NCBI RefSeq assembly: GCF_006345805.1
Contig: NC_042999.1
Coordinates: forward strand, 4,526,001-4,590,000
Direction of reading: 5' to 3'
Length of the DNA stretch: 64,000 bases
Origin: Octopus sinensis
Taxonomy: Eukaryota
The translations under genes and the position numbers were made by a program. The notes below the pieces were generated by a model. That model saw only the letters and a list, made by a program, of their open reading frames with translations, was not told the origin of the DNA and ran no database searches. Shown here piece after piece: positions 3,322 through 64,000 of the stretch; position 1 is the stretch's first letter; the number at the start of each line of letters is the position of its first letter.

Positions 3322-4384
3322 GTATATGTATATATTATGTATATATATTTATTGAGAAGTTCAGTATTATTCTTGTGCTAAACACATATTCACTGAAAAG
3401 TTTCTTTTTGACTTTGATTTACTTCTCAAAAAAGAGAAAAAAAAAATGCAGAATGCAGCAAAGGCAAAGTAAATAATTTCCATAATCTTACAAAAACTAT
3501 TTGAAACTTTCACAATTTCTGATGTTAAAAGAATTCTTCGCCAAATATTTTGGTAGAAAAAATGAAACAATGACATAGCTAAGAATTTCTTGTCAAAACT
3601 TACCTCTTACCAAAACTTACCTTTTAGAAAGGGGAGATTTATTTCATAAATCCTGACAGGTTAATAGAAGAGATTCAGTGTTGATAATTCTCTCTGTTTT
3701 ATCTTTATTATGAAGAAAATATAGTTAATAATATGAGATGATTAAAAAAACAGAAACTAGGAAATTTTCCTAACCAACAAACAACTAGTGGTGTGTTCTA
3801 TGTATCTATTTTATATCATCTGGTCTACTTGATGATGTTCCTGATCTACTCTAATCAGGGAATATATGCATGTAAGAAAAAATATATATACATATATATA
3901 TTCATATACATACACAATATGTGTGTGTATGTATATATATATATGTGGAATTTCCAGTATGCTAGGGGGTATATGAGTGCTTGTGTGTTTATACACTCCT
4001 TTTTATTAATTCCATTTCTTCTTCTTCTCTTCAGGCCAATCTTCCCCCATACTCAATCAGCCTGTTTTGCCTGACATTTCTCTGTGACCCTTTTTTTTTT
4101 TTTTGTTATACCAAAATTTCAGAAAGAAAAAAAATTCTACCGTGAAATGATTTCCCCTCATCCCCCCACTTCCCACACCCCCACCAAAAAAAAAATAATA
4201 AAATGAAATAAATAAAATAAATATATATAAAGAAATGACATATTTTTATCACTTTTAAACTTATTCCAGGTTGTTGTGAGCGCATTGACCATGCGAGATT
4301 TGTAAATGTGCAGTGTTGTGCAAAAGAGAGGATGAAAGAGAAGCCATGAGTGCACAACCTAAATGCAGTTGTAAATGGGACAAT

Positions 4385-5760
<1,376 letters not shown>

Positions 5761-26422: not shown

Positions 26423-27290
26423 ATATGTACAAATTAAAAAGATGTTGCTAAGGTTTTTGTCCAATGCACAAACAATTCTGCCAATAATGATAATAATGGA
26501 AAAGTGTGAAGTGCTATTCTGATAGTGTTTAGTGTAATAAATTTGAAATAATGGGGATTTGCAGTAGTTATTGAATATGTTGAGAGAATTGTTCAGTTAC
26601 CAACCTGGCTGAAACTGGCTCTGTAGTACAAATGTCTTGTTTTCATAAGTTTTGAATTAAAATCTTCCACCCAACCATAGTCACAATTTATGTTCCTAAC
26701 ACTAGCTTAATGATAACTGAGTTATTTTACTAAATTCTTTGTTATATTTAAAATAATTGAAAGACACACAGAGCATCTCAAAATACAGTAACGAAAGGGT
26801 TAATTAATATACTTCTATTATCCTTCATCATCATTTAACATCTGTCTTCCATGCTGGCATGGGTTGAACAGTTCGAAAGGAGCTGGCAAGTCAGAGAGCT
26901 GCACCAGTCTCCAATTATCTGTTTTGGCATGTTTTCTACAGCTGGATGCCCTTCCTAACACTAAACACTTTACAGAGTGCACTGGGTGCTATTTTGTGTG
27001 GCACCAACACCAGCAGGGTCACCAAGTGACTGGCAGGACAAAGACCTCTCAACTGGGAGAGGGAATGGAACTACAGGAAGTGACTAGAGTACAACAGAGG
27101 GATAAAGATAGATGCCTTATACAAAGGAGATACTTGGCTACTCCTGTAGGAGAGGACAGAGAGAAATAGATAAGGGTGGAGATGCATCAGGACCTACCAA
27201 CATGTAGCAGTGGGGTGGGGATTGAAAATAACAGAAAATTGTTCTTTAAGAAAATGTGTAAAAGATCACATCACAGCACTTTTTTTTTAA

Positions 27291-27296
27291 TTTATT
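27291..27296 (-). promoter_or_regulatory. Candidate polyadenylation signal AATAAA of MIC19
   Basis: tttatt on the + strand, about 290 nt downstream of the stop codon. Confidence 0.45.
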
Positions 27297-27582
27297 CTCT
27301 TGTAATCATTCCCTTTTAACGAAGCCAAATACAATTAATTGTGAAGACTAAGATATAAAAGAATGTCTCGTCTCTTCTAACAGCTTTGAACAAGCCACAG
27401 ACAAACATAACAACTCTAATGGAAGTGGGAAGACGGCCCTTCAAGGTCTTAAGTTTGGTGGTAATCTGCAGGACGGCTGCTTTGATGGTAAGTAATCTTT
27501 TTGAAGAACTGCAGCCGTGGAATCTTCCATTGACCATACCCAGCATTCTTAGAATATTGTTTCAATTGGTGCAAGAATTAGG

Positions 27583-27609
27583 TCAGACTTTCTTGGCAAG
27601 AATAACATT
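27583..27609 (-). CDS. CHCHD3: MIC19 terminal coding exon G (NVILAKKV*)
   Basis: Strong acceptor tttttttttctttcttcAG, phase 0. The short tail before TGA is comparable in length to the CHCHD3 C-terminal tail. Confidence 0.85.
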   Translation of the reverse strand, partial: NVILAKKV

Positions 27610-30213: not shown

Positions 30214-30349
30214 TTGTCTTGCTTGGTCGACAGCTGTAGCAAAGGCATGAACTTCCGCTGAGCAGTTAAGTGGGTGAGACTGATTGGTGCGATAGCATTC
30301 CAATACCTTCAGCTGGAGATCTTCGCAGACAGGAGCCTCAACATGTTTT
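30214..30349 (-). CDS. CHCHD3: MIC19 coding exon F, 136 nt, phase 2 to 0, CHCH domain
   Basis: Acceptor tttgtcaattacAG and donor GTaagt. Translates to KHVEAPVCEDLQLKVLECYRTNQSHPLNCSAEVHAFATAVDQARQ, resembling CHCHD3 PVCADLQAKILQCYRENTHQTLKCSALATQYMHCV. Confidence 0.95.
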
Positions 30350-32582: not shown

Positions 32583-32653
32583 AGGAATTTGTTTTCTACT
32601 TCTTCCACTGCTTTTGCAAATTCTTGCCTTGTGGCAGTATTCATCTTTGTACT
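32583..32653 (-). CDS. CHCHD3: MIC19 coding exon E, 71 nt, phase 0 to 2
   Basis: Acceptor ccgtgttccAG and donor GTgagt. Translates to STKMNTATRQEFAKAVEEVENKF(L), resembling CHCHD3 TTEQYQKAAEEVEAKF. Confidence 0.92.
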
Positions 32654-33965: not shown

Positions 33966-34139
33966 CTGGAGTTGCAGAGATTGCATTTTATCTTGGTAAA
34001 ATTCTTCAATGGATCTGAAAGCTTTTTCTCGCTCCACATAAATTTCGTTCATTTGTTTATAAATATGATTTCGTTCCATGGCAATCAATTCCTTCTCCTT
34101 GCTTTCGGCCTCAACAGCTGGAGCAAGAACTTCTGGCGG
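33966..34139 (-). CDS. CHCHD3: MIC19 coding exon D, 174 nt, phase 0-0, coiled coil
   Basis: Acceptor ttcctggtAG and donor GTttgt. Translates to PPEVLAPAVEAESKEKELIAMERNHIYKQMNEIYVEREKAFRSIEEFYQDKMQSLQLQ. The FRSIEEFYQDKMQSL segment aligns with CHCHD3 LKKQDAFYKEQLARL. Confidence 0.9.
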
Positions 34140-36039
34140 CTACCAGGAACAATATCAAATAAAACCATTTTCATTTCTTTCAACAACAACAACAGTCCAG
34201 ACATTAAACTGGGGTCCGTGTAAAAATTTGATTATCGATATGTCAATAAGCCCATGAAGATCAGTAGCAATGAAGAGTGGATTAATTTTAGAAGATTTAA
34301 GATTTGCAGAACATGTCTAAATTTTAATTACTGTTAGTTCTCACTCCACAGCAAAAGTTATATATGGAAGGGGTAATACACACAATTACGAATGATTTGA
34401 AAAACTATATTCACTGAAACACCTAACTTTAACCCTTTAGCATTTAAACTGGCCCTAACCGGCCAAAAGTATTCTGCCTGTTTTATGTTCAAACTGGCCA
34501 GATCTGGTCTCTCACACTAACCCTACAATATCGTTTTAAAAGTTAACAGCTACCTCATCAAAATCTCATCACTACAAGATAATGCTGGATTAGTTCAAAA
34601 CAAAGTGGATGAAAAGGGATTAATTTTGGCAGAATAATGTGAACACTAAAGGGTTAAAGACAGCCAAAGAACTACACATCACTTATCTAAAAGATGGACA
34701 AACCCTCTGGATACCAACCCACCTGGCACTGCTGCTGGGTTCTTTGACTCAAACCTCCTGATTTAACCCTTTGGCATTCACATTACTCTGTCAAATGTAA
34801 TGTTTATTTATCCACATTGAATTAATCGTGAATTATTTCAAAGCTTTGAGATTTCAAACTTTGTGTTTGCTTACTTTCAGAATGACATTGTAAGGTAGAC
34901 GTGAGAAGCCAGATCCAGCCAGTTTGAATATAAAACCAGTAGGAGTATTTTTAGCCAGATATGGCTAGTTTAAATGCTAAAGAACTGAAGTGATCTAAAT
35001 TTAAACCTTTCATCATAATTTCATGTTACTTTCTCGTCTAGATGCCAGTTTAAAAATGACAAAACTATTTCGATAAATTTTTCATTATTTTCAAAACTAA
35101 TTAAAATAAAGGCATTTTATTTCAACAGAAATATGGTAATAAAATGGTCAACCCTTTCGATACCAACCTACCTGAAACTGCCCTTGGCTATATGATACTT
35201 CTCATGATCTAAATTCACCTTTAGCATGCTTAAGGCACATCATGTCACTGTACGAGTTTTCTCCCCTGTAGCTGCAGGTGCATTGTGTCGCATTGAGAAA
35301 ACTCATACAGCAATGTGAGGCATCTACAGCATGTTAAAGGTTTAAAGCTTTTCATAAAAATTTCATTTTAATTTTTGTTCCAAATATCAATTTAACAATG
35401 ACATCATCATTATCACCTTTACCATTTACATCCACTTTTCCCTGCCTGCATGGGTCAGATGGAATTCATTTAGGCATATTTCTTATAGCTGGATGCCCTT
35501 CTAGTCACCAACTCTCAACTGTTTCCAAGCAAGAAATATTTTTCTGGCAATATTACCTTGCATATTCACATGGGTCAGACAAGGTGATGCTTGTCTACAA
35601 CCATCACAGGATGTCAAGACAAAGATACACATCAGCACACACACACACACACATGAGGCTTCTCATAGTTTCCATCAATCAAATCCATTCACAAGGCTTC
35701 GGTCAGGTCATGGTTATAGGACACTTGCCCAAGGTGCCACACAGTGAGATTGAACCTGACACTATCATACTTGGGAAGCAAGCTTCTTAACCACTCAGCC
35801 ACACACACATTATTTTACTAAATTCTTTGTTATCTTAGAAATTTATTAAAATATGTAGAGAGTGTATTTCAGTGGCAATATAGTAAGAAAAGAGTTAAAG
35901 AAAGTTAGCAACATTTCTCTATTTACATCGAAGATTAAATACAGAATATGAAACAAGATCAACATTTGCAATATTTTCTAAACATACATTGATCTCATAC
36001 AAACCTTGTCACATTAATTCAATTTAGCCATAAGTACAA

Positions 36040-36250: not shown

Positions 36251-36881
36251 ATAATAAGCAAAATTTTCTCTTTGCTACAAAAAAAAAATTAAATTATTGT
36301 GGAATGTAACAGCAGCAGATAGCAAGCTAAAAATAAAAGCCTCAAGAAAATAAAGATGATTAAATGATAAAATGCTGTAAAGAATTTAGAATTTTGTTAG
36401 ATGAAAAAATAAGACTTCCATCAATTATTAAGACCAAGTTTTAAGTCTTAGAACCATCACTGTCCTTGTTTAAACGTCCACTTTTTCATGCTCACATGGG
36501 TCGGACAATTTGTTGACCTAGGATTTTCTATGCTCAGAAGCTTCTTCTGTCCCTCAACCGGATGAGATGATACATTCCTCTTTCTCCTCAATGGTATGTC
36601 ACCTTTGGAGAATTCTTGAATCTTGAGATTATCTCTGCTTCACGTCGTGTGGAGTTGATCATCATTGACATTGTCAACAGGAGGAAACGAGTTTTAATAA
36701 ACCAAGAATTTATGCTGTGTGGTATTTGGAACACACGGATTTCTCTGTCTTGTTCAAATACATGCGACTGACCATTAAGTTCTTCCTCTTGGACACTTTA
36801 TATGTGTGTGTGTGTGTATGTATATGTATATATATATATGTGTGTGTGCATATGTATATATATAGATATATATGTATATAG

Positions 36882-36913
<32 letters not shown>

Positions 36914-37453
36914 TATAGATATATAAATATGTATATAGATATATAAATATATAGATATATATATGTATATAGATATATAAATATGTATATAGATATATAA
37001 ATATATATATATATTTATGTATATAGATATATATATGTATATATATTTGACAAAATGGGTAAAAATTAAAAAAGTGCATAGCATTACATTAAACAATACA
37101 TTCAAAAGTTTAAATAGAAACGCAAATGGAAAATTCTCCATGTAGAATCCTGCTAATTTCTCCCCAGTTCTTGTCCACAAGATCACGCCTTTAACGATAA
37201 CATTGTTCACTTTTGGTGGCATGAAGCTGCTGGGAATAGCAAACGGACAGGTGACAGTGAAGAAAACTGTCCACTGTTCATTTGCAATTTCCAGCAGCTT
37301 CTCTCCATTAATGCCAACAAAAATCAACAAAATTATTGTTAAAGGGATGAAACTGTTAGGATCTTTTGGACAAGAACTGATGAGAAATTAGGAATATCCT
37401 ATGTGGGAAATTTCCATCTGTTAGGTTTCTATTTAAATTTTAGAACATATGTA

Positions 37454-38779: not shown

Positions 38780-39083
38780 TGATCAACACCATTATTTGAT
38801 ATCCAATTCTCCACCCTTCCAGGTGTCACACAGAGTTTGTTGAGGCAAAACGTCTAAGGGCAGATGCCTTTGCTGTCACCAACCATTACCTGTCTTCAAG
38901 CAAGTTAATAGTCACCTGTGTCCAACATGCTTTTCGCAAAAGACAGGAAATTGAGATCACAAATGTGATAGTGATGCCCATGTGTAATTATAAGACAAGG
39001 GAACACACAAGCAAACATATATATATGAATATATACACGTCTGTATCAGTGTGTATATGTACATACGTACATACATGCATACA

Positions 39084-39133
<50 letters not shown>

Positions 39134-39817
39134 TGCATGCATACATACATTGCCAAAGATCCCAGCATCACCATCACAATACAGGACCAGATACTGCTTG
39201 GGTTTCAAGAACCCATAGCTCCTCAATATTCTTCCAAAATGAGTGAGTGGCCTGTATGATGTGCACGTGTCTTCAAAACAAAACTGTATCTCCTCCTGCC
39301 AAGGGTTTGAGATGATCCTACCTCGTGGCAGGAAACAGAGATGAAGGTAGCAGCACCAATCCCACCTCATTCACTGAATGCCACACATCAGAGAAAGGTT
39401 TCAAATAATGGTGTAGCACAGCCAACAGTAGTGCCCCAGCATGACCACAGCTCTAAAGCTGATACAATTTCGAAAGTTAAAGAATATACATGCATACATA
39501 TGTATGTATATATATACACATATATATATGCATACATGTATATATATATATACATGTATATATATGCATACGTGTATATACATATATATATATGCATGTG
39601 TATACATATGTATGCATACGTGTATATATATGCATAAGTGTATATATATATATATATGCATACGTGTATATATATATATATATATGCATACATATGTATA
39701 TATAGATATCTATATGCATGTATATATATGTATATGTGTGTGCATACATACATGCATGCATGTACGTACGTATATATATTTCATATGTATGTGAAAAGTC
39801 GAAAAGTAATACACAAT

Positions 39818-41339: not shown

Positions 41340-43368
41340 ATCATCATCATCATCATCGTTTAGCGTCCGTTTTCCATGCTAGCATGGGTTGGACGGTTCT
41401 ACTGGGGTCTGTGAAGCCAGAAGGCTTCATCAGGCCCAGTCAAATCTGGCAGTGTTTCTACGGCTGGATGCCCTTCCTAACGCCAACCACTCCGTGAGTG
41501 TAGTGGGTGCTTTTTACGTGCCACCCGCACTGGTGCCAGACAGAGCTGGCAAACGGCCATGAACGGATGGTGCTTTTATGTGCCACCGGCACGAGGGCCA
41601 GGCGAGGCTGGCAACGGACACGAAACGGGGCGGTGCTGGCAACGGTCGCGAAACGGAAAGTTCTCTTACATGCCACCGGCACTGGTAACACATCTGCAAT
41701 TTCCATTGATCGATTTCCATTGATCGATTTTGATTCTGATCGTCACTTGCCTCAACGGGTCTTCACAAGCAGAGTTTTGACATGCCACCGGCACTGGTAG
41801 CACATCCGCAATTTCCATTGATCGATTTCGATTCTGATCCTCACTTGCCTCATCACGTCTTCACAAGTAGAGTTTTGTGTCCCAAGAAGGGAAGGTATGC
41901 ATACGTAGGCTGGCTCCATCCCATGTAGAAGGCCACGGGTTATGGACTCACTTGTCCTGCCGGGTCTTCTCGCGCACAGCACACTTCCAGAGGTCTCGGT
42001 CTCTAGTCATTTCCTCAGTGAGACCTAAAGTTCGAAGGTCGTGCTTCACCACCTCGTCCCAGGTTTTCCTGGGTCTGCCTCTTCCACAGGTTCCCTCCAC
42101 CGCTAGGGTGTGGCACTTTTTCACACAACTATCTTCATCCATTCTCGCCACATGACCATACCAGCGCAAACGTCTCTCTTGCACACCACAACTGATGCTT
42201 CTTAGGTCCAGCTTTTCTCTCAAGGTACTTACACTCTGCCGAGTGTGAGTACCGGCATTACACATCCATCGGAGCATACTGGCTTCATTTCTAGCGAGCT
42301 TACGCATATCCTCAGCAGTCACGGCCCATGTTTCACTGCCATGTAGCATGGCTGTTCGTACACACGCATCATACAGTCTGCCTTTCACTCTGTGCGAGAG
42401 GCCTTTTGTCACCAGTAGAGGTAAGAGCTCTCTGAACTTTGCCCAAGCTATTCTTACTCTAGCAGTTACACTTTCAGCACACCCGCCCCCGCTGCTGACT
42501 TGGTCACCTAGGTAACGGAAACTATCAACTATTTCTAGTTTTTCTCCCTGGAAAGTGACGGAAGTTGGTCTCTCAGAGCATTTTCAGTGTTTATTGTTCC
42601 TGAGCATCTGCCACATACAAAAACCATCTTCCTAGTTAGCTTTCCTTTGACATTGCTGCATCTCTTATGTGTCCATAGCTTACACTTGGTGCATCTTATA
42701 GAGTTTCTACCTACACCTTTTCTACAGATCGAGCAGGGCCATCTACCTGAAGGTGTTTGTGATTGTCTACCTTCCTACTGATTACGACTTTGGTTTTAGC
42801 TAGATTGACTCTGAGGCCCTTCGATTCTAATCCTTGTTTCCACACCTGAAACTTCTCCTCCAGTTCTGATAGCGACTCAGCAATTAGAGCAAGGTCATCA
42901 GCATAGAGGAGCTCCCAAGGGCATCTTGTCTTGAATTCCTCCGTTATTGCCTGGAGGACTATGATAAATAGGAGGGGGCTGAGTACTGAGCCTTGGTGGA
43001 CTCCTACCTCTACCCGGAATTCTTCACTGTACACATTTCCAACCCTCACCCTACTAGCAGCGTCCCTGTACATGGCTTGCACAGCTCTCACTAACCATTC
43101 ATCTATCCCTAGTTTCCTCATTGCCCACCAGATAAGGGATCGGGGGACCCTGTCGAAGGCTTTCTCCATGTCAACAAAAGCCAGGTACAGGGGCTTATCT
43201 TTGGCTAGGTATTTCTCCTGCAGCTGCCTTACCAGGAATATAGCATCAGTAGTACTTTTCCCTGGCACAAACCCAAACTGCATCTCATCTAAACTAACTC
43301 TCTCTCTAATTAGTTGGGCTATGACCCTCTCCGTAACCTTCATCACCTGGTCCAACAGCTTGATGCCT
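41340..43368 (-). mobile_element. 5'-truncated, comparatively young RTE-clade LINE (RT, PHD-like finger, 3' UTR, (GAT)n tail)
   Basis: ORFs 42711-43421 (QFGFVPGKSTTDAIF, FVDMEKAFD, GVHQGSVLSP, LLYADD) and 41948-42412 (LHGSETW, RRLRWYGHV, GRGRPRKTW). About two frameshifts. Confidence 0.95.
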
Positions 43369-43744
43369 CTATATATATATATACACACACACACACACAT
43401 TAAGGCAATTAATTCCCCCAAATTACTAGGTATTGAACCAGTATTTCCTTGGATGAAACTACCTCTTCATGAGGTTAACACAACCTCTTAACCGAATATG
43501 TGTCTGTGTATATATACGTATAGATATATATTTATGTGTATGTATATATATATATATACATATACGTGTGTGTGTGTGTGTATATAATATATATATACAC
43601 ACACACACATGTATATACATGTATATATGTGGTGCACCTGAGCACTGTATACAATAATTTAATTATCATGTATATATATGTATATATATATATATACATA
43701 TGTATATACATATGATATACATATATATACATGTATATGTATAT

Positions 43745-44343: not shown

Positions 44344-44586
44344 CATAAAGTATATATATATATGTATGTATGGAGTATAAATATATATATATATATATAT
44401 ATAGGTGTGTATGAGTCAAAATATATAATATATATATATTATCTATATATATAGTGTGTGTATTATTATATATGGTATGGTGATGGATATGATTTATATA
44501 TGTGTGTATATAATATGGGGAGATATAATAAATAATATATATATGTGTGTGTGTATGAGTATAATAATATATATATATATGTGTAG

Positions 44587-44620
<34 letters not shown>

Positions 44621-45179
44621 TATATATATATAGATATATGTATGAGTATAAATTATATATTATATATATATATATATAGGTATGAGTATAAATATTATAT
44701 ATATATATATATATATATGTATGAGTATAAATATATATATATATATATATATATGAGTAATATTAAATATATATATATATATGTATGAGTATAAATATAT
44801 ATATATATATATGTATGAGTATAATAATATATATATATATATATGTATGGAGATAAATATATATTATATATATAGATGTATGAGTATAAAATATATGATT
44901 ATATATATATATATATGTATGAGTATAAATATATAGTATATATTATGAGTATGAATATAAATATTATATTATATATATATATATATATGAGTTAAACTAT
45001 ATATATATATTATATATATGTATGAGTATAAATATATTATATATATATATTATGTATGAGTATATAATATATATATAATATATATATATGTATGAGTATA
45101 AATATATATATATATATATATATATGTATGAGTATAAAATATATTATATCTATATATATATATATATTATATGTATGAG

Positions 45180-45221
<42 letters not shown>

Positions 45222-45500
45222 ATATATATTATATATATATATATATATATGTATGAGTATAAATATATATATATTAGATATATATATAATGGCGGTGCCC
45301 CAGCATGGCCACAGCTCATAAGCTGAAAATGGAATCAATCATATATATATATATATGTATGAGTTAAAGATATAATATATATATATATATATATATTATA
45401 TAATATATATATGTATGAGTATAAAATATATATATAATTATATATATATGTATGAGTATAAAATATATATATATATATATTATATATATATATATATATA
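44300..45500. repeat. (TA)n-based compound minisatellite with recurring TATGAGTATAAAT anchor
   Basis: More than 20 copies of the anchor separated by variable (TA)n tracts. Confidence 0.9.
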
Positions 45501-45762
45501 TAATTAAATGCAGGTTTTATTCAAATGTTTTATACTTCCCACATCCATTTCAAAGAAAACATTGGTTTTATTGCTGAGGGGATAAAATGATGTAAAACAA
45601 TGTAATCATCTTGTCAGGGAAAAAAGGGAAACAAAACACATCAAGAAGCCATTTTAACCGAATGTGATTACCACGTACATGATGAAGGGATCGCTGGAAA
45701 GTTATTTTTTAAAAAACTGTTAATGGATTTAATATCAAAGGCAATTCAGAGACAGAGGTTTC

Positions 45763-45799
<37 letters not shown>

Positions 45800-46846
45800 A
45801 TATATATATACACACACACATATATATATATACACACATATATATATATATGTATGTATGTATGTATATGTGTGTGTGTGTATATATATATATATTATAC
45901 GTATGTATATGTATATAAATGTATATATATGTGTGTATATATATGTATATATACACAAGTTATATATACATATTATATATATATATTCAGCATATGACAA
46001 ATTTAGCTTTGGGCTTTCATTGTTAATTGCATTCAATGGTCACACGATGTTTTGCGCAGCGTGAAGAGGAACATACTGGAAAGAAAGAGCACATCAACAA
46101 AGCGAGAGAAGACCATGGACTTGAACTCAGTATTTCATCTGTTACAGACGTTTCAGTACTCAGCAACACATGATGTGATGCTGCAAATGCAATCTGTAGA
46201 TGCACCTCAGAAGTGCAGCATCAGTAAGCAAACATTATTTAGAGCAATAAATGACAAATGCAAATAACAGGCAACATGCAGTAACCGAATTCCCATCGCG
46301 AAGGGGGACAAGGCTGAAAGGAGAGGGAAAGAAGTGGGGTCAGACAGATGTGGACAGGTATTGGGGATAATCCAGGTGAGCTGCTAACCATGATATGGGG
46401 ACACAGGACCTTACGATAGAAAAAAATGGATGAGCAATTAAGATAAGACATCGAATGGTCAAGAATACAGTTTTGGTGTAATAAGCAAAAAGCAGTGGTG
46501 TTGTGGTGTCAGCATTCACCATTGGTAGACGCGTCTGGTTAAATGTCCACAAAGACATCTAAAAACATACAGATGTACATTTATGCACTCACACCAACAC
46601 ACACCCAAACAGACTCAAACATGTATACATGAACACATATACACGGCATGTAAAAGCACCCACTACACTCGCAGAGTGGTTGGCGTTTGGAAGGGCATCC
46701 AGCTGTAGAAACTCTGCCAGATCAAGATTGGAGCCTGGTGCAACCATCTGGTTCGCCAGCCCTCAGTCAAATCGTCCAACCCATGCTAGCATGGAAAGCG
46801 GACGTTAAACGATGATGATGATGATATATATATACATATACACAAA

Positions 46847-52400: not shown

Positions 52401-53049
52401 TGAAAGCAAAAGAAACACACAAAATGATTAGAAATGAGAAAAAGCTTTAAGATTAAGGATGAAGAGAGGCAAGACAAAAGGATCCCCTTTTTTTCTGTTC
52501 ATGTCAAAAGAGACAACAGCGAGACAACAAACATTCAATTTTCACTAGAGATATAGATAGACACACAGACAGACAGGATGAAAGAGCGACAGGAGGAGAA
52601 GAATTGACCACCACCCCCACTACATAACTGGTACTTTATCGACCTTGAAAGAATGAGAAGCAGAGTTGACCTCGGAGCACAATGAAGGTGGAACAATTAC
52701 CACAAAATAAACGAACTGATGCTCTAACAACTTGGCTAATGAACCAACTAATACAATGTGGTTGGGAAGCAAACTTCTTAACCACACAGCCACATTTGTA
52801 TCTGCGTATATATATATATCAGGGACATGCCGTCTAGGCAGGCAACATAAAACACAATACATCAATGGCAATATTTTCCACTCGTGGCAAAATATGTACT
52901 TAATTCAATAAAATCATGAAGGTTTCTCTGGTTACTATGCATAAAATGAGATGCAAATCTGCCTTCATCTCAGTCGTGCACCGGTATTTCACTTATTTTT
53001 TTGTGTTTTACTACATAAACTACCTACCCTGAGTAATTGCTTCTAGCAC

Positions 53050-53056
53050 GTGCCTG

Positions 53057-53091
<35 letters not shown>

Positions 53092-53130
53092 TATATATAC
53101 ATATACACACACACACACACACACATATAT

Positions 53131-53161
<31 letters not shown>

Positions 53162-54029
53162 TACATATACACACACACACACATATATACATATACACAC
53201 ACACACACACATATACATATACACACACACACACACATATATACATACACACACACACATATATACATACACACACACACATATATACATATACACACAC
53301 ACATATATATATACACACACACACACACACATACATATACACACACACATATATACATATACACACACACACATATATATATACACACACACACATATAT
53401 ACATATACACACACACACATATATACATATACACACACACACATATATACATACACACACACACATATATACATACCACACACACACACACTATACATAT
53501 ACACACACACACACATATATATACACACACACACATATATACATATACACACACACACACATATATACATATACACACACACACACATATATACATATAC
53601 ACACACACACACATATATACATATACACACCACACACATATATACATATACACACACACACATATATACATATACACACACACACATATATACATATACA
53701 CACACACACATATATACATATACACACACACATATATACATATACACACACACACACATATATACATATACACACACACACATATACATATACACACACA
53801 ACATATATACATATACACACACACATATACATATACACACACACCACATATATATACATATACACACACACACATATATACATATACACACACACACATA
53901 TATACATATACACACACACACATATATACATATACACACACACACATATATACATATACACACACACACACATATACATATACACACACACATATATACA
54001 TATACACACACACACACACATATACATAT

Positions 54030-54060
<31 letters not shown>

Positions 54061-54551
54061 TATATATACACACACATATATATATACATACACACACATA
54101 TATACATATATACACACACACATATATACATATATACACACACACATATATACATATATACACACACACATATATACATATACACATACATATATACATA
54201 TACACATACATATATACATATATATACACACACACACACATATATATATATACATACACACACATATATACATATACACACATATATACATATACACACA
54301 CACATATACATATACACACACACACATATATACACACACACATATATACACACACACATATATCACACACACACATATTATACACACACACACAACACAT
54401 ATACACACACACACACATATATACACACACACACACACCACACACATATATACACACACACACATATTATACACACACACACCACATATATACACACACC
54501 ACACACATATATACCACACACACATATATATACACACACACACATATATAT

Positions 54552-54604
<53 letters not shown>

Positions 54605-54699
54605 CCACATATATACACACACACACACCACATATATACATACCACACACATATATACACACACACACACACATATATACACACACACACCACATATAT

Positions 54700-54739
<40 letters not shown>

Positions 54740-54740
54740 T
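53050..54740. repeat. About 1.7-kb compound (CA)n/(TA)n microsatellite
   Basis: Directly visible. It is the source of the spurious 431-579 aa ORFs. Confidence 0.97.
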
Positions 54741-54784
54741 TGGAAGGAAATATTTTTACATGTTGGCTTGTAGTGATAAAACCC

Positions 54785-55125
54785 AATAAAACCCTTTGTT
54801 AACGGGTAAAGACTCCCACCTCGATCATGACTGACCATGGTATTGCACCTGGAAAGTTACCTTCCAAGGCACAAGTCCTGGCAAGGTGGTTTATGGAAGA
54901 CCAGCTGTTGCCCATGCAAACCAGCCATACCACTGATGTTATCCCAGGGAAAGGCAAAGGGGCCGATACAGCTTGACACCAGTGACAACTCAGCTGAGTG
55001 ATCTGGAGCAATGTGAAATAAAGTGTCTTGCTCAAGAACACAGTACACAGCCCGGTCCAGGAATTGAACTCACTACCTCATGATTGTGAACCCACTGCTC
55101 TAACCACTAAGCCATGCACCTTCAC
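54785..55125 (-). mobile_element. tRNA-derived SINE (second family)
   Basis: Minus-strand head aggtgcatggcttagtggttagagc...gagttcaattcc. The block ttgagcaagacac is shared with 47690-47870 and 56970-57125. Confidence 0.7.
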
Positions 55126-56739: not shown

Positions 56740-57706
56740 GACTTCTTTCAGTTTCTGTCTACCAAATCCACTCACAAGGCTTTGGCCAGCCTGAGGTTAT
56801 AGTAGAAGACACTTGCCCAAGGTGCCTCGCAGTGGGACTGAACCCAGGACCATGTGGCTGGGAAGCAAGCTTCTAACCACACAGCCACACCAGCACCAAC
56901 AAAAGGATGAAGATTCTTCCCAAGTCATATAAAGGCAAAGACCCAGTTTCCTGATTTGTATGGCAAATCTATTTCCCCCAGATGGGATGCTAGTCTGTTG
57001 CAAGTTTGAGTGGACTGGAGCAAAGTGAAATGAAGAGTTTTGCTCAAGAACACAATGTGTCACCTGGTCCAGGAATTGAAACCACACTCTTACGATCAGG
57101 AGTCCAACACCCTAACCACCAAGCTACAGTAATCAAGTAGAAAGGAAAAAATTACTTGAAACTGCCCCATCCGTGAACTCTACATCCTTTTAATACATTT
57201 CGGTACCATTAAATTGGTAACACACATTTTCCAAAATTCAGAAGACTGAGATTAGAATTTGATGGTAGAACAACTATACCTCGATAGGTCCCACCAGGTA
57301 AAGAAATTGAAATATGAGGACATAATAAACAAGGACCATGTCAAGAGCCGGCATGTGGCCTCTACATACAAGAAGAGCATCCAGCCACAAGGAACATGCC
57401 AAAGAAGACACTGGAACAAACTGCAGGCCTTGGGCCCATTGGGTCCTGCTAAACCATCCAACCCAGGCCAGCAGGGGAAATAGACACTAAATGATAAATA
57501 CTACAATTTGTAGCTCTGCCTTCGAATCTTAAAAACCCATAGTGTTTGTTCGTAACGGAAAACTACAGATGGAGAAAGTATGAAATATTCTGTAACAAAT
57601 AAACTGCTGTTTTGATTATTTTTATTTTGAATGTTAGAAATTTTATGAAGCCAAACCAGACATGCAAAAGTGGGAGGAAAAAAAAAAAAATGGGAAAATA
57701 TCTTAC

Positions 57707-59053
57707 CTCAATCTTGGGAGCAGCAGGAGTAGGGGTCAAAGGTTGTACGATAGAAGAAGTAGAAATTTTAGGACCAGGAATATCTTCCTTAGGAGAAGGT
57801 TCCTCAACTGAAGGCTCAGCTGGTTCTGGAACAGAAAGAGCAGCTGCTGCTGCTGCTGGGGCTGGGGCTGCCAAAATACTCTCTTCTTTGGCAGCTTCTT
57901 TCTGTGGGAGTTTTTCCTCTTCAGAACTCAGCGCCAGAGCTGCTGGTATGCTCTCCATTTCAGTTTCTTCCTGTGGAAGTTTCTCCAATACCACTGCTGG
58001 AATAATTTCTTTCTCAGCAGCTTCTTTAGGGGCAATTTCCTCTGGAATTGCCAAAACACTTTCTTCCTGCTTGGTTTCATTGGGTAGGACTGTTTCCACC
58101 TCAGGACTCAGCACTGCTGAAATACCCTCGACTTTTTCAAGTTCTTTTGGCAGAGCTTCTTCTACTTTTGAACTTAATTCTGGTGTAACAGAAATAACCT
58201 CGATCTTTTCAAGTTCTGTTGGTGGGGCCTCTTCCACCTTCAAACTCAATTCTGGTGTTGCTGAAATAACCTCAATCTTTTCGAGTTCTTTAGGTGGGGC
58301 TTCCTCCACCTTCAAACTCAATTCTGGGGTTGCAGAAATACTTTCAATCTTTTCAAGTTCTTTTGGCAGACCTTCCTCCACCTTCAAACTTAATTCTGGT
58401 GTAACAGAAATAACCTCAATCTTTTCAAGTTCTTTAGGTGGGGCTTCCTCCACCTTCAAACTCAATTCTGGGGTTGCTGAAATAACCTCAATCTTTTCGA
58501 GTTCTTTAGGTGGGGCTTCCTCCACCTTCAAACTCAATATTGGGGTTGCAGAAATACTTTCAATCTTTTCAAGTTCTTTCGGTGGGGCATCCTCCACCTT
58601 CAAACTCAATTCTGGTATAACAGAAATACTCTCAATCTTTTCAAGTTCTTTTGGTGGGGCTTCCTCCACCTTCAAACTTAATTCTGGTATAACAGGAATA
58701 CTCTCAATCTTTTCAAGTTCTTTTGGTGGAGCTTCTTCCACCTTCAAACTCAATTCTGGTATAACAGAAACACCCTCAACCTTTTCAAGTTCTTTTGGTG
58801 GGGCTTCCTCCACCTTGGAACTCAATACTGGTGTTGCTGAAATACCTTCGATCTTTTCAAGTTCTTTTGGTAGGGTTTCCTCCACCTTTAAACCCAACAC
58901 CGGAATTGTCGAAATATCCACTTTCTTCTCAGGTTCCGTGGGTTGGGTTTCTTCTACCTTGGAACTCAACACTGGGGCCTCTTCCTTTCTCTCACTTTCA
59001 ACAGGTTTTTCTTTTTCCTTGGAAAGCAAATCAAATTTAGTAGTGGAACTGTA
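57707..59053 (-). CDS. CHCHD3: MIC19 coding exon C, 1347 nt (449 codons), symmetric phase 0-0, with 24-aa PEVK-like tandem repeats; probable cassette exon
   Basis: Acceptor catattacAG and donor GTaaga. Stop-free frame YSSTTKFDLL...PAAPKIE lies within ORF 57563-59080. Length is divisible by 3. Confidence 0.75.
58112..58969 (-). repeat. Coding minisatellite: 12 units of 72 bp (24 aa, consensus LSLKVEEAPPKELEKIEVISATPE); last unit 66 bp
   Basis: Units counted in the translation and checked against nucleotide spacing (unit 1 starts at 58969, unit 12 at 58177). Confidence 0.95.
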
Positions 59054-59823
59054 CTGTAATATGATTTGAACATGTAACACACATTGTTAATCATCTCCTA
59101 CACCCCACCATACTTACATGCAACCTCCACCCAGCCACACTCCTAGTCCATCACCCCCCACACATTTCTACCCCACCCCCTCTACTTTGACACCTCATCA
59201 CCACTATTTTTTCATCTATTTCCACCTCCACCCCAGTTACTCCTACACTCACTTCTAAAATGTGAGTAGTCATGTAGTTCCTCAACAGCAAGAAACCTGT
59301 TCTGCTCTGGGCCCTTGCCCCATAATTTAACCCCTCCATCTCCAAGCATAAAGCCACCTTTCTAAGGTTCAGAGTCTTGGAAGCTGCATGGCAACATCAC
59401 TAGTCCTGGTGATACAAAACAAGCACCTAATACACAATGCGTGTTACATGTATCAGCATGTATCAGTGGAAGTACACGAGAATATACAGTTACATCCTTT
59501 GTAGTCTTTCTGTAAAATAGTTGGCATTAGGAAGGGCACCCAGCCATAGAAATCATATCAAACCAGACATTGGAGCACGATGCGGTCCTTGGCCCACTGA
59601 ATCCGGTCAAACCATCCAACTCGTGGCAGCATGGAATATGGACACGAAATAATAATTACTCCAATTTGTAGCTCTGCTTCATATCTTAAAGACAGTGCCT
59701 CCTGTTCATAATGGAAAACTAGAGATGGAAAAAATATGAAATACTCTATAAGAAATAAACAGCAGAAGCTAAAGCAAACAAGCAACAAAAATTAATTTTA
59801 AAAAAAGCCAGAAAATATCTTAC

Positions 59824-60524
59824 CTCAATCTTGGGAGCAGCAGGACTGGGGATCAAAGGTTGTAACATAGAAGAAGAAGGGATTTTAGGACCAGGAATAA
59901 CTTTCTTAGGAGAAGGTTTTGGAGTTGGAGATTCAGCTGGTTCTGAAATAGAAGGAGCTGTTGTTGCTGCTTTTGCTTTCGTTGGGGTACTTTTTTCCTT
60001 GGCAGCTTCTTCCACTTTAGCCTTCTTTTCAGTTTCTTTCTGTGGGGTCTTTTCCGCTGGTTCTGCCGCGATACTATCTTTAGGGGCAGTTTTATCTACT
60101 TTGGAACTTAAGACTGGAGAAGTTGAAACACACTCTTTCTTTTCAGATTCTTTGGGTGCGATTGCCTTAGAACCCAGCACTGCTGGAAGACCCAATTTCT
60201 TTTCAGGTTCTTTGGGTGCAAGTTTTTCCACTTTAGGGCTCAACACAGCAGCCTCTTCCTTGCTTTTACTGTCAACAGGCTTCTGTTCTTTTTCCTTGGA
60301 AAGCAAATCAGGTTTAGTAACAGGAGAAATAGGGGATTTTTTAGGAGAACCAGGAACAGGGATAGTGGGCGAAGGCGGTAAAATAGGAGTAGCAGGGATA
60401 ACGGGTATAACTGGGAAACTCGGTACCGGTAATTGAGGTTTCTCTGGTGGTGCTTCTACTGCAGGGGCTTTACGCTTGTCTTCAACAATCACCTTTCTTT
60501 TTAGTGGTTCATTGCTCTTGGTAA
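59824..60524 (-). CDS. CHCHD3: MIC19 coding exon B, 701 nt, phase 1 to 0, Pro-rich/PEVK-like low-complexity insert
   Basis: Acceptor ctttctctatttgtAG and donor GTaaga. Open frame VTKSNEPLKRK...PAAPKIE lies within ORF 59746-60612 and is in phase with exon A. Confidence 0.8.
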
Positions 60525-61896: not shown

Positions 61897-61948
61897 CTTT
61901 GGGTTTTTCCTTGATGCCATAAATCTGCTTGGCAACGGAATCCGAAAC
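61897..61948 (-). CDS. CHCHD3: MIC19/MIC25 (CHCHD3/6 family) internal coding exon A, 52 nt, phase 0 to 1
   Basis: Acceptor ttctctttgttttAG and donor GTaaac. Translates to VSDSVAKQIYGIKEKPK, resembling the N-terminal LSENVIDRM motif of vertebrate CHCHD3. Its phase matches the next exon. The start-codon exon is not in the window. Confidence 0.8.
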
Positions 61949-63072: not shown

Positions 63073-64000
63073 ATCTGTGGATGGTGCAAAGTCCCTCTTG
63101 ACCCAAGGTAACGTAGTGGTGGAACAATGTAGTTGACAGGGCCATTAGGGAAAAGAAACAGGCATGGAAGGACTGGAAGAACGGTGGTAGTAGGGAATTC
63201 TATCAGATTGCCAGAAGGGAAGCTAGGAGACAGGTTTATTAAGCCAGAGGGGAAGCAGATAAGAAAAAATTTGCTAATGTTCTACATCATGAGGACCAAA
63301 GACCTTGAAGTGTTTCATGTTGCAAGAGAGTGTGTGAGAGCGAATCATGATGTCATAGGAGAGAAATGTGTCCACATGGATGATGGCTCACTTGCATTTA
63401 ATGAGGCTGCAAAGAAGGAGACTTAGAGACACCACTATGAACGGTTGCTAAATCAAGGAAGTGAATGGGAGAAAGAGAGTCTGTCAAATGTCAACCCAAC
63501 AGAGGGACCAGCTATCCAAGTTGACAGTACTTTGGTAGATAAAGCAATTGAGGGTATGAAGACAGGGAAAGCCCCCGGCCCATCAAGAATCATCGCGGAG
63601 ATGCTTAAAATATCTGGCGGTGTCAGCTATAGTCTAGTCACCCGTATAGTCAATGAGGTGATACATGAAGGAGTCATATCCAATGACTGGTGAAGGCGAT
63701 GCATTCGATACGAATAATTACAGAGGTATCAAGTTGTTGCATCAGGTAATGAAAGTCATGGAGAGGGTCATAGCCCAACTAATTAGGGAGAGAGTTAGGT
63801 TAGATGAAATGCAGTTTGGGTTTATGACAGGGAAAAGCACCACTGATGCGAAATTTCTGGTAAGACAGCTGCAGGACAAATACCTAGCCAAAGATAAAAC
63901 ACTGTACCTGGCTTTTGTTGACATGGAGAAAGCCTTTGATAGGGTCCCCCGATCCCTTATCTGGTGGGTCAATATGGAAACTAGGAATAGATGAGTGGTT
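63073..64000 (+). mobile_element. RTE-clade LINE ORF2 fragment, same family as 41340-43368, running off the window
   Basis: KTGKAPGPS, NYRGIKLL, EMQFGFMTGKSTTDA and FVDMEKAFDRVPR. Stops and a deletion are present. Confidence 0.92.

What the first reader, a model, noticed from the sequence alone, without database searches (positions are those of the whole stretch)
57340..60320. Exon C was born by partial duplication of exon B plus its downstream intron, with a newly recruited acceptor
Seen: exon C begins with homology to the middle of exon B (TKFDLLSKEKE-KPVES versus TKPDLLSKEKEQKPVDS), and both exons end in PGPKI.SS...QPL.P.PAAPKIE|GTAAGATATTTT. The following intron sequence is alignable for about 300 bp, including the same RTE-tail remnant (57350-57706 versus 59510-59823). 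Exon B contains about three degenerate proto-units of the 24-aa repeat. The acceptor of C (ttacAG tacAG, two AGs 5 nt apart, only the first in frame) has no counterpart in B. Inference: this is a traceable exon-birth history of duplication, de novo 3' splice site, then repeat expansion.
Basis: partly seen in the sequence, partly recalled or inferred. Interest (0 to 1): 0.72.

Follow-up and report, generated by a model that had tools for sequence, protein, structure and literature searches.

The report
Duplicated exon in octopus MIC19 gene
A piece of one exon of a cephalopod mitochondrial cristae gene (MIC19/CHCHD3), with its downstream intron and a resident retroposon, was copied about 0.5 kb downstream and later grew an internal 24-residue repeat array; this is a clean but ordinary case of exon duplication, and no transcript yet shows the copy being spliced in.

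Summary
On the minus strand, exon B (60524-59824) and the open block C (59053-57707, 449 codons, phase 0-0) share two homologous blocks. These are B 60317-60077 with C 59040-58791, and B 60011-59531 with C 57900-57372. Identity is about 75-83%, and the second block runs about 290 nt past identical GTAAGATATTTTC donors.

The intron similarity is not due to independent insertions. Both copies carry the same SINE-like retroposon at the same site. They share a unique flank that none of 11 other window copies has, and 19 derived substitutions (control pairs: maximum 10).

Homology stops 14 nt downstream of C's only in-frame AG, and the matching part of B has no AG. The 72-nt array (units 76-99% identical) is younger than the duplication.

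The gene is the MICOS subunit MIC19/CHCHD3. Using a published octopus rate, the duplication dates to roughly 25-45 My. It predates the split from the species that supplied the only related transcript.

That transcript joins B directly to the next exon, and no transcript containing C was found. Exon status therefore rests on indirect evidence: 3n-only indels, a synonymous excess in the repeats, an intact frame, and a copied strong donor.

Verdict: a new member of a known kind, of modest interest.

The parts
61897..61948 (-). Exon A of the MIC19-like gene (VSDSVAKQIYGIKEKPK, donor in phase 1)
   Evidence: tblastn and blastn of transcript L001/P0001; exact coordinates; ttttAG acceptor and GTAAAC donor.
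59824..60524 (-). Exon B, the ancestral linker exon (701 nt, phase 1 to 0). It is basic (net +13) and is the source of the duplication from about 60317 onward.
   Evidence: It is present in the related-species transcript P0001. Squid- or cuttlefish-like homologues P0002-4 have a single PPKIPRSALLQLLSPSP motif.
59676..59823 (-). Unique proximal part of the B intron, co-duplicated (homologue at 57516-57706)
   Evidence: 79.4% identity over 141 columns, K2P 0.24, with indels of 5, 38, 4, 3, 4 and 3 nt. None of 11 other retroposon copies shares this flank.
59380..59675 (+). SINE-like retroposon in the B intron, with its sense on the + strand (antisense to the gene). Its degenerate GTTAAA-(GAT)n tail ends near 59675. 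Its 5' part continues to about 59380-59490.
   Evidence: Other window copies end sharply at 59656 plus the tail. There is weak 5' continuation to about 59398. The family is about 270 nt long.
59054..59530 (-). Spacer between the end of the duplicated source and exon C. It has no counterpart downstream of C. Its last nucleotides supply the TTAAC branch-like motif (-37) and the acceptor AG (59055-54).
57707..59053 (-). Block C, a putative cassette exon (449 codons, phase 0-0). It is acidic (net -52). 59040-58791 and 57900-57707 are homologous to exon B.
   Evidence: The frame is open while both other sense frames carry stops.
58097..58960 (-). Array of 12 units of 72 nt (24 aa, consensus KVEEAPPKELEKIEGISATPELSL). 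Units 2-11 are 76-99% identical, and units 6-7-8 resemble 9-10-11.
   Evidence: TRF; unit table and identity matrix; 14 synonymous against 16 non-synonymous variants.
57516..57706 (-). Copied proximal intron after C, including the identical GTAAGATATTTTC donor
57372..57515 (+). Copied retroposon fragment. The tail is present and the copy is cut off at about 57372, so the distal breakpoint of the duplication lies inside the element.
33966..34139 (-). Exon D (phase-0 acceptor), the next exon after B or C across a 23.6-kb intron
32583..32653 (-). Exon E
30214..30349 (-). Exon F, encoding the CHCH-like segment (CEDLQLKVLECYRTNQSHPLNC...)
27276..27609 (-). Last exon G (NVILAKKV, stop at 27585-27583) plus 3' UTR

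Best explanation
The window carries most of a cephalopod MIC19/CHCHD3 gene (a MICOS subunit) on the minus strand.

Shown:
- A SINE-like retroposon inserted, antisense, about 150 nt downstream of the linker exon B. It aged there for about 0.15 substitutions per site.
- A segment of about 790 nt was then copied and now sits about 480 nt further down the same intron. It runs from the middle of exon B (about 60317), across the donor, to the middle of the retroposon (about 59531).
- The copy kept B's strong donor and a phase-0 end.
- Inside the copy, two or three pre-existing 22-24-residue proto-units were amplified in several rounds into 12 units of 72 nt. The latest round left units 7 and 10 differing by 1 of 72 nt.
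- The copy changed from basic (+8 in the source part) to strongly acidic (-52).

Inferred:
- The first AG upstream of the junction (59055-54) is preceded by one TTAAC branch-like motif with no AG in between. It makes the copy a 1347-nt, frame-neutral (0-0) cassette exon.
- Inclusion would insert 449 residues into the linker between the SAM50-binding N-terminus of MIC19 and its MIC60-binding CHCH end.
- Skipping gives the conserved A-B-D isoform seen in the related species.
- The high density of GARGAR purine hexamers may help a long exon with an average acceptor to be recognised.
- Purifying selection on the frame and on the repeat sequence implies that C is translated at least sometimes.
For: Homology and its limits.

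Single retroposon insertion before the duplication:
- The unique flank beyond the element's 3' tail is found only in B and C among 13 copies.
- B and C share 19 derived states, with 11 private to B and 16 private to C over 123 columns. Control pairs average 3 and reach at most 10.

B is ancestral:
- The related-octopus transcript P0001 and three more distant cephalopod homologues have a single copy of the linker end.
- In a three-way comparison, B(window) = B(L001) and differs from C at 79 sites. The other two patterns occur at 8 and 15 sites.

Timing:
- Unique-intron K2P is 0.24 and the retroposon part is 0.31.
- Window against L001 gives dS of about 0.10-0.12 in three partitions.
- Published calibration: JC 0.09 = 25 My and 0.2 = 56 My (PMC13282606).

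Array younger than the duplication.

Coding constraint on C:
- Exonic indels of 3, 6, 6, 9 and 3 nt are all multiples of 3. Only 2 of 8 intronic indels are (Fisher p = 0.016).
- There are 14 synonymous against 16 non-synonymous distinct variants among units 2-11, a per-site ratio of 0.33 (p = 0.003-0.03).
- The probability of no stop under neutral substitution is 0.05-0.14.
- Composition alone leaves the 462-nt 3' unique part open in 1 of 10,000 shuffles.

Phases and splice context.

Gene identity:
- Pfam DUF1690 scores 31.1 bits against a cut-off of 29.7.
- The best PDB profile hits are Mic60-Mic19 fusions, but weak (E = 0.46).
- The N-terminus MGxxxSTRR..EEDE appears in P0002-4.
- Domain roles are taken from review PMC13293838.
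Against: No transcript or protein containing C was found in any search. The only close transcript skips it or lacks it.

The B-versus-C omega in the 3' block is about 1.1. The source part of exon B itself evolves fast between species (omega 0.64, with indels), so B/C dN/dS cannot separate 'coding' from 'relaxed'.

The stop-codon test alone is weak (p = 0.05-0.14). The antisense strand of C is also open.

The acceptor has only 11 of 20 pyrimidines, although exons A, D and F of the same gene are similar at 12-13 of 20.

The way the copy was placed cannot be resolved. It could be an insertion 480 nt downstream, or a tandem duplication followed by a deletion.
Confidence: 0.68

Rival explanations
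1. C is a dead intronic duplicate (pseudo-exon) that is never spliced in. Its open frame survives because it began as an ORF, because the array is young, and because its purine-rich composition is poor in stops.
For: No C-containing product turned up in three word-indexed searches and one exhaustive search. The related transcript joins B to D. The 3' block has omega of about 1.1. Substitution alone leaves the frame open in 5-14% of neutral simulations. The antisense frame is open too.
Against: All five exonic indels are multiples of 3, against 2 of 8 in the adjoining intron (p = 0.016). Synonymous variants are in excess among repeat units (p = 0.003-0.03). Both other sense frames carry about two stops per unit. 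The donor and 21 exonic nt before it are perfectly conserved within a 75-80% background. Logan k-mer contigs would be expected to break inside a 72-nt array, so the absence of assembled transcripts is weak evidence (inference).
Confidence: 0.25
2. The intron similarity comes from two independent insertions of the same abundant retroposon, and only exonic sequence was duplicated.
For: The element is abundant, with at least 12 copies in 64 kb. The two copies have different 5' extents, as 5'-truncated retroposons do.
Against: About 90 nt beyond the element's 3' tail (59676-59763 and 57516-57607), plus the donor-proximal intron, are homologous only between B and C. B and C share 19 derived substitutions, against a control maximum of 10. 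Homology is continuous from the exon through the donor into the element.
Confidence: 0.02
3. The similarity profile is shaped partly by later gene conversion between the 3' ends of B and C, not only by one old duplication, so divergence-based dating is biased young near the donor.
For: dS is 0.19 in the 3' exonic block and 0.79 in the 5' block. There is a 34-nt perfect run across the donor. Window B and C share AAGATTGAG where the orthologous L001 B has AAGACAGAG.
Against: The unique intron just beyond the donor is back to about 79% identity with many indels. B=C≠L sites are few (8) compared with B=L≠C sites (79). Splice-site and enhancer constraint could explain the conserved run. The 5' block dS may be inflated by out-of-register repeat units.
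Confidence: 0.3
4. Both exons are ancient (present in the coleoid ancestor), or C is the older one and B is the derivative.
For: None directly. Transcripts could hide a skipped cassette exon in the outgroups.
Against: B alone carries the conserved N-terminal third and the phase-1 acceptor that matches exon A. C lacks them and cannot replace B in frame. Intron divergence of 0.24-0.31 is only 2-3 times the dS between two octopus species. Distant cephalopod homologues have one copy of the motif.
Confidence: 0.03

Closest known systems
Tandem exon duplication giving rise to alternative exons (Kondrashov & Koonin 2001; Letunic, Copley & Bork 2002; cited from my own knowledge)
   Same: The adjacent, same-strand exon copy lies within one gene, with a copied donor and compatible phases. 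The new copy is plausibly alternative.
   Different: Classic cases duplicate whole exons and usually give mutually exclusive pairs. Here only the 3' two-thirds of an exon plus intron was copied and the acceptor is foreign. The phases (B 1-0, C 0-0) allow only a cassette after B, not mutual exclusion.
Exonisation of intronic sequence by recruitment of a new 3' splice site (for example Alu exonisation; new mammalian exons, bioRxiv 10.1101/009282, listed)
   Same: The acceptor comes from sequence that was not previously a splice site. The new exon is expected to be alternatively included.
   Different: The coding body is not intronic or transposon sequence. It is a copy of an existing coding exon that brought its own donor. 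The retroposon here is a passenger in the intron, not the exon.
Intra-exonic or exon-level repeat expansion in extensible linker proteins (titin PEVK, nebulin super-repeats; from my own knowledge)
   Same: P/E/V/K-rich units of about 24-28 residues are amplified in blocks, here with a hint of three-unit blocks. Copy number differs between species.
   Different: There is no sequence homology: exhaustive HMMER gave only low-complexity hits. The array sits inside one exon of a small mitochondrial protein rather than as many separate exons of a muscle giant.
MIC19/CHCHD3 and its vertebrate paralogue MIC25/CHCHD6 (review PMC13293838)
   Same: The relatives have an N-terminal MG..STRR motif. A central variable region is followed by a C-terminal CHCH segment. 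Pfam DUF1690 scores above its cut-off.
   Different: Human MIC19 is 227 aa with twin CX9C motifs. The octopus protein is 402 aa without C and would be about 851 aa with it. The fourth cysteine is Ala or Ser in all four cephalopod sequences. The review text contains no occurrence of 'isoform'.

Membership tests
Exon-duplication-derived alternative exon | Significant similarity between neighbouring exons of one gene on the same strand | tested here: met
   blastn E = 1e-30 and 3e-70; 75-83% identity.
Exon-duplication-derived alternative exon | Reading-frame compatibility of the copy (symmetrical phases for a cassette exon, identical phases for a mutually exclusive pair) | tested here: met
   C is 1347 nt, phase 0-0, between the B donor (phase 0) and the D acceptor (phase 0). 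The cassette condition is met. The mutually exclusive condition is not met, because B is phase 1-0.
Exon-duplication-derived alternative exon | Transcript evidence that the copy is spliced into mRNA | tested here: inconclusive
   No C-containing product. One related-species transcript lacks C. No RNA data from this species were accessible.
Exon-duplication-derived alternative exon | Evidence of purifying selection on the copy | tested here: met
   3n-only exonic indels (p = 0.016), synonymous excess in repeats (p = 0.003-0.03), intact frame. The 3' block omega of about 1.1 is a caveat.
MIC19/CHCHD3 (MICOS subunit) | Match to a curated Mic19 family profile above its threshold | tested here: met
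   P0001 against PF07956 DUF1690: 31.1 bits against a cut-off of 29.7. That this Pfam family is the fungal Mic19 family is from my memory. Window exons D-G are 93-98.5% identical in DNA to P0001's transcript.
MIC19/CHCHD3 (MICOS subunit) | C-terminal CHCH domain with twin CX9C motifs | tested here: not met
   The sequence reads CEDLQLKVLEC (C-x9-C), then C-SAEVHAFAT-A. The fourth Cys is Ala or Ser in P0001-4 and in the window. A profile search gives only weak hits to the Mic19 CHCH of fungal Mic60-Mic19 fusions (E = 0.46). The layout resembles the fungal type rather than the human one.
MIC19/CHCHD3 (MICOS subunit) | N-terminal Gly-2 myristoylation motif | tested here: inconclusive
   The first exon lies outside the window. 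MGASGSTRR is present in P0002-4. P0001 is a GTG-started call on a 5'-truncated contig.
SINE-like retroposon with LINE(RTE)-type tail | Dispersed copies with a sharp common 3' end followed by a simple-repeat tail | tested here: met
   At least 12 copies end at the same position, with ...GGACGTTAAA(C/T)GATGATGA(TGA)n.
SINE-like retroposon with LINE(RTE)-type tail | Tail shared with an autonomous RTE element | tested here: inconclusive
   One copy (41340-41620, minus strand) lies about 330 nt 3' of an RVT_1 ORF on the same strand. Continuity with that element could not be shown without a repeat library.

The most novel reading that the evidence does not exclude
Octopods have evolved a lineage-specific long isoform of the MICOS bridging subunit MIC19. 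A roughly 30-40-My-old duplicated cassette exon would insert a 449-residue, strongly acidic module of 24-residue repeats, possibly beta-rich, between the SAM50-binding N-terminus and the MIC60-binding CHCH end. Regulated inclusion would alter the length or charge of the outer-inner membrane bridge, and so the geometry of crista junctions, in particular tissues. The second AG, 5 nt downstream, would give an unproductive (stop-containing) splice form.
Probability: 0.2. Interest if true: 0.6.

Novelty: new member of a known kind. Interest (0 to 1): 0.35.

Why it matters
Every step of this history is readable in one sequence. A dated retroposon serves as a built-in marker. Next comes a partial exon-plus-intron duplication with both breakpoints located to within about 15-40 nt. 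An acceptor was then borrowed from neighbouring sequence. Finally came staged repeat amplification with a reversal of charge. That makes it a useful teaching or benchmark case for how long cassette exons arise. If C is translated, it also raises a concrete question about how much linker a MICOS bridging subunit can tolerate. Exon duplication and repeat expansion are themselves well-known processes.

Tried and rejected
(1) Protein searches for a C-containing product. I queried B+C, P0001 and a junction-focused query without the array. Only P0001 and three distant cephalopod MIC19 homologues came back, none with C.

(2) Exhaustive HMMER of exon C against 1.84 billion representatives. There were 44 hits, the best at 1.8e-18. 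The four I read, including the best two, are unrelated low-complexity repeat proteins.

(3) Exact-product look-ups of the two window ORFs. Nothing was on record, so neither the species nor orthologous genomic loci could be fetched.

(4) Search for a counterpart of the 477-nt spacer (59530-59054) downstream of C, or anywhere else in the window. None was found, so a simple intact tandem duplication is not supported, and the placement mechanism stays open.

(5) Test for residual homology upstream of the junction. The score was no better than shuffles, so I rejected the idea that the acceptor evolved by point mutation from former exon-B sequence.

(6) PDB sequence search with P0001: no hits. With a four-sequence profile, only weak Mic60-Mic19 hits appeared.

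(7) AlphaFold2 on exon C alone. Mean pLDDT was 48.7, too low to use for a fold search, so none was run.

(8) Literature. Nothing was found on MIC19 or CHCHD3 in cephalopods, or on run SRR16213285.

(9) 'C's acceptor is unusually weak' was rejected. Its pyrimidine content (11 of 20) matches exons A, D and F of the same gene.
Full report
**What is there**

The finding lies in a minus-strand gene. Translating the region gives two long open blocks.

- Exon B is 60524-59824. It is 701 nt, with a ttgtAG acceptor in phase 1 and a GAG|GTAAGA donor in phase 0.
- Block C is 59053-57707. It is 1347 nt (449 codons) and ends in the same GAG|GTAAGATATTTTC.

A protein search with B+C returned one close relative, P0001. 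It has 402 aa and comes from a 1.5-kb Logan transcript contig, L001.

tblastn and blastn of that transcript place the remaining exons:

| Exon | Coordinates | Note |
|---|---|---|
| A | 61948-61897 | donor in phase 1 |
| B | 60524-59824 | phase 1 to 0 |
| D | 34139-33966 | acceptor in phase 0 |
| E | 32653-32583 | |
| F | 30349-30214 | |
| G | 27609-27583 | followed by 3' UTR |

The first exon lies outside the window.

**Gene identity**

- P0001 matches Pfam DUF1690 above its curated cut-off (31.1 bits against 29.7).
- Three more distant cephalopod homologues (P0002-4, 322-351 aa) start with MGASGSTRR..EEDEK and end in a CHCH-like segment.
- A profile of the four sequences gives its best PDB hits, though weak, to Mic60-Mic19 fusions.

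The gene is therefore the MICOS subunit MIC19/CHCHD3. According to review PMC13293838, the N-terminal region of MIC19 binds SAM50. [quoted passage not shown] Exons B and C encode the variable region between those two ends.

**Checking the observation**

blastn of the B region against the C region gives two collinear blocks.

- B 60319-60077 aligns with C 59042-58791.
- B 60011-59531 aligns with C 57900-57372. This block crosses the donor and runs about 290 nt into the intron.

Global alignments give these values:

| Segment | Identity | K2P |
|---|---|---|
| 5' exonic block | 74.8% | 0.31 |
| 3' exonic block | 82.7% | 0.20 |
| Unique intron (59823-59676 / 57706-57516) | 79.4% | 0.24 |
| Retroposon part | 74.8% | 0.31 |

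A 34-nt run across the donor is identical in both copies. Using the second AG gives F-H-Y-stop.

**Is the intron similarity a co-duplication or two insertions?**

Part of the shared intron (59656-59509 in B) belongs to an abundant dispersed family, with at least 12 copies in the window. I aligned 13 copies with their flanks.

- The element's sense strand is the window's + strand, so it is antisense to the gene.
- Its 3' end is a sharp ...GGACGTTAAA(C/T)GATGATGA(TGA)n tail that faces the exon.
- B and C both carry a degenerate version of this tail.
- Beyond the tail, B and C share about 90 nt of flank (59676-59763 / 57516-57607) that none of the other 11 copies has. They also share the donor-proximal intron.

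The insertion site is therefore the same.

Within the element, B and C share 19 states that differ from the family consensus. Another 11 are private to B and 16 are private to C, over 123 columns. The 55 control pairs share 3 on average and 10 at most.

The element therefore inserted once. It aged for about 0.15 substitutions per site and was then duplicated together with the exon.

B's copy of the element continues 5'-ward to about 59380-59490, whereas C's stops at about 57372. The distal breakpoint of the duplication therefore lies inside the element.

I could not confirm the 'RTE-tail' label. One copy sits about 330 nt downstream of an RVT_1 ORF on the same strand, but continuity with that element is unproven.

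**The proximal breakpoint and the acceptor**

Homology starts at ACTAAA (B 60317 / C 59040). The 30-120 nt upstream align no better than shuffled sequence, and B has no AG in the preceding 42 nt.

The acceptor AG (59055-54) therefore lies 14 nt outside the copied segment, in unrelated sequence. A single YTNAY motif (TTAAC) sits at -37, with no AG between it and the first AG. Pyrimidine content is 11 of 20, similar to exons A, D and F of the same gene.

The 477-nt spacer between the end of the source and C has no counterpart after C or elsewhere in the window. I cannot tell whether the copy was inserted about 480 nt downstream or arose as a tandem duplication followed by a deletion.

**Polarity and age**

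B is ancestral for three reasons.

- It alone carries the conserved N-terminal third and the phase-1 acceptor that fits exon A.
- The related-octopus transcript and the three distant homologues have one copy of the ...PPKIP.S..LQ.L.PSP.. motif.
- In a three-way alignment, B(window) and B(L001) agree against C at 79 sites. The other two patterns occur at 8 and 15 sites.

C serves as an outgroup to polarise two changes in exon B. Window B lost a 15-nt KLPQK segment, and L001 B lost one proto-unit.

Window against L001 gives dS of 0.10-0.12 in three partitions, whereas the B/C neutral proxies are 0.24-0.31. The duplication is therefore about 2-3 times older than that species split.

Using the rate implied in PMC13282606 (JC 0.09 = 25 My, 0.2 = 56 My), the duplication falls at roughly 25-45 My and the species split at roughly 15 My. 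Both are rough estimates. It follows that the L001 species should also carry C, so its transcript most likely represents the skipped isoform (inference).

**The array**

In codon register there are 12 units of 72 nt starting at 58960.

- Units 1 and 2 align with B's proto-units.
- Units 2-11 are 76-99% identical to one another. Units 7 and 10 are 99% identical, 3 and 5 are 96%, 8 and 11 are 90%, and 6 and 9 are 89%.

This hints at duplication of a three-unit block followed by homogenisation. The expansion is clearly younger than the B/C duplication. Further degenerate periodicity follows at 58096-57881.

The net charge reversed, from +8 in the source part of B to -52 in C. GARGAR hexamers are five times denser in C than in B.

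A single-sequence AlphaFold2 model is of low confidence (mean pLDDT 48.7). It draws two strands per unit and leaves the flanks disordered. I treat this only as a hint.

**Is C an exon?**

Evidence for:

- All five exonic indels are multiples of three, against 2 of 8 in the adjoining intron (Fisher p = 0.016).
- Among units 2-11 there are 14 synonymous and 16 non-synonymous distinct variants, a per-site ratio of 0.33, with 16 of 30 at third codon positions (p = 0.003-0.03 depending on transition bias).
- The frame is intact, while both other sense frames carry about two stops per unit.
- Neutral substitution would leave the frame open in only 5-14% of simulations.
- The copy carries a consensus donor, and its phases are 0-0.

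Evidence against:

- No product containing C appeared in three word-indexed searches or in one exhaustive search.
- The 3'-block omega is about 1.1.
- The source part of B is itself fast-evolving (omega 0.64).
- The antisense frame of C is also open.

Short-k-mer transcript assemblies probably break inside such an array, so the absence of assembled transcripts is weak evidence (inference). I put about two-thirds probability on C being a real, at least occasionally included, cassette exon.

**Verdict**

The duplication history is sound and unusually well resolved. The 'exon birth' claim still needs spliced reads.

The process belongs to a known class (exon duplication, recruitment of a nearby acceptor, repeat expansion), so I rate it a new member of a known kind. 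The most interesting open possibility is a long acidic MIC19 isoform specific to octopods.

Noticed in passing
window 34120-34160 (exon D acceptor) versus L001 804-830: The window reads ...ttcCTGGTAG|CCGCCAGAAGTTCTTGCT where the related transcript has exonic CTGGCAGCTGCT-CTTGCC. In the window the acceptor appears to sit 7 nt further 3', offset by a 7-nt insertion. Exon length (174 nt) and frame are preserved, but the first four or five residues differ (PPEV against LAAA).
   Followed up: partly
window 60060-60330 (exon B) versus L001 300-620: The linker exon B differs between the two octopus species by whole-unit indels. The window has a 60-nt proto-unit that L001 lacks. A 15-nt KLPQK segment is deleted in the window. 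L001 has an extra 21-nt SPKKSPT duplication and a 15-nt SKEAV segment that window B lacks. Omega is 0.64 here, against 0.08 for the N-terminal part of the same exon.
   Followed up: yes
window 30214-30349 (exon F); P0001-P0004: The CHCH segment of all four cephalopod MIC19 homologues has C-x9-C, then a third Cys. An Ala or Ser stands where the fourth Cys of the human twin CX9C would be. The ECYRTNQSHPLNC spacing resembles the fungal Mic19 CX10C.
   Followed up: partly
L001 1-20: P0001's 'MC' N-terminus is a GTG-started call with an in-frame TAG 6 nt upstream. The contig's 5' end is probably truncated or chimeric, and the true start is likely MG... as in P0002-4.
   Followed up: no
window 59811-59844 and 57694-57727: A 34-nt perfectly identical run straddles both donors within a 75-80% identical background. 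Window B and C share ATTGAG where L001 B has ACAGAG. This could reflect local gene conversion or splice-related constraint.
   Followed up: partly
window 41340-43421 (minus) and 63665-63994 (plus): These are non-LTR reverse-transcriptase ORFs (RVT_1, E = 1e-31 and 2e-11). The first has a copy of the same SINE-like family about 330 nt beyond the end of its downstream ORF (41948), on the same strand.
   Followed up: partly
window 53020-54840: About 1.8 kb of (TG/TA)-type microsatellite, with strong GC skew, gives spurious ORFs of 430-580 aa in several frames. Similar TA/CA-rich tracts lie at about 4100-5500, 36800-37300, 39000-39800 and 44400-46100.
   Followed up: no
window 57707-59053: Exon C is strongly acidic (pI 4.4, net -52), whereas its source in exon B is basic (pI 9.4, net +8). 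The units have an alternating hydrophobic/polar pattern (IEVIS, LSLKV) that AlphaFold2 draws as two strands per unit at low confidence.
   Followed up: partly
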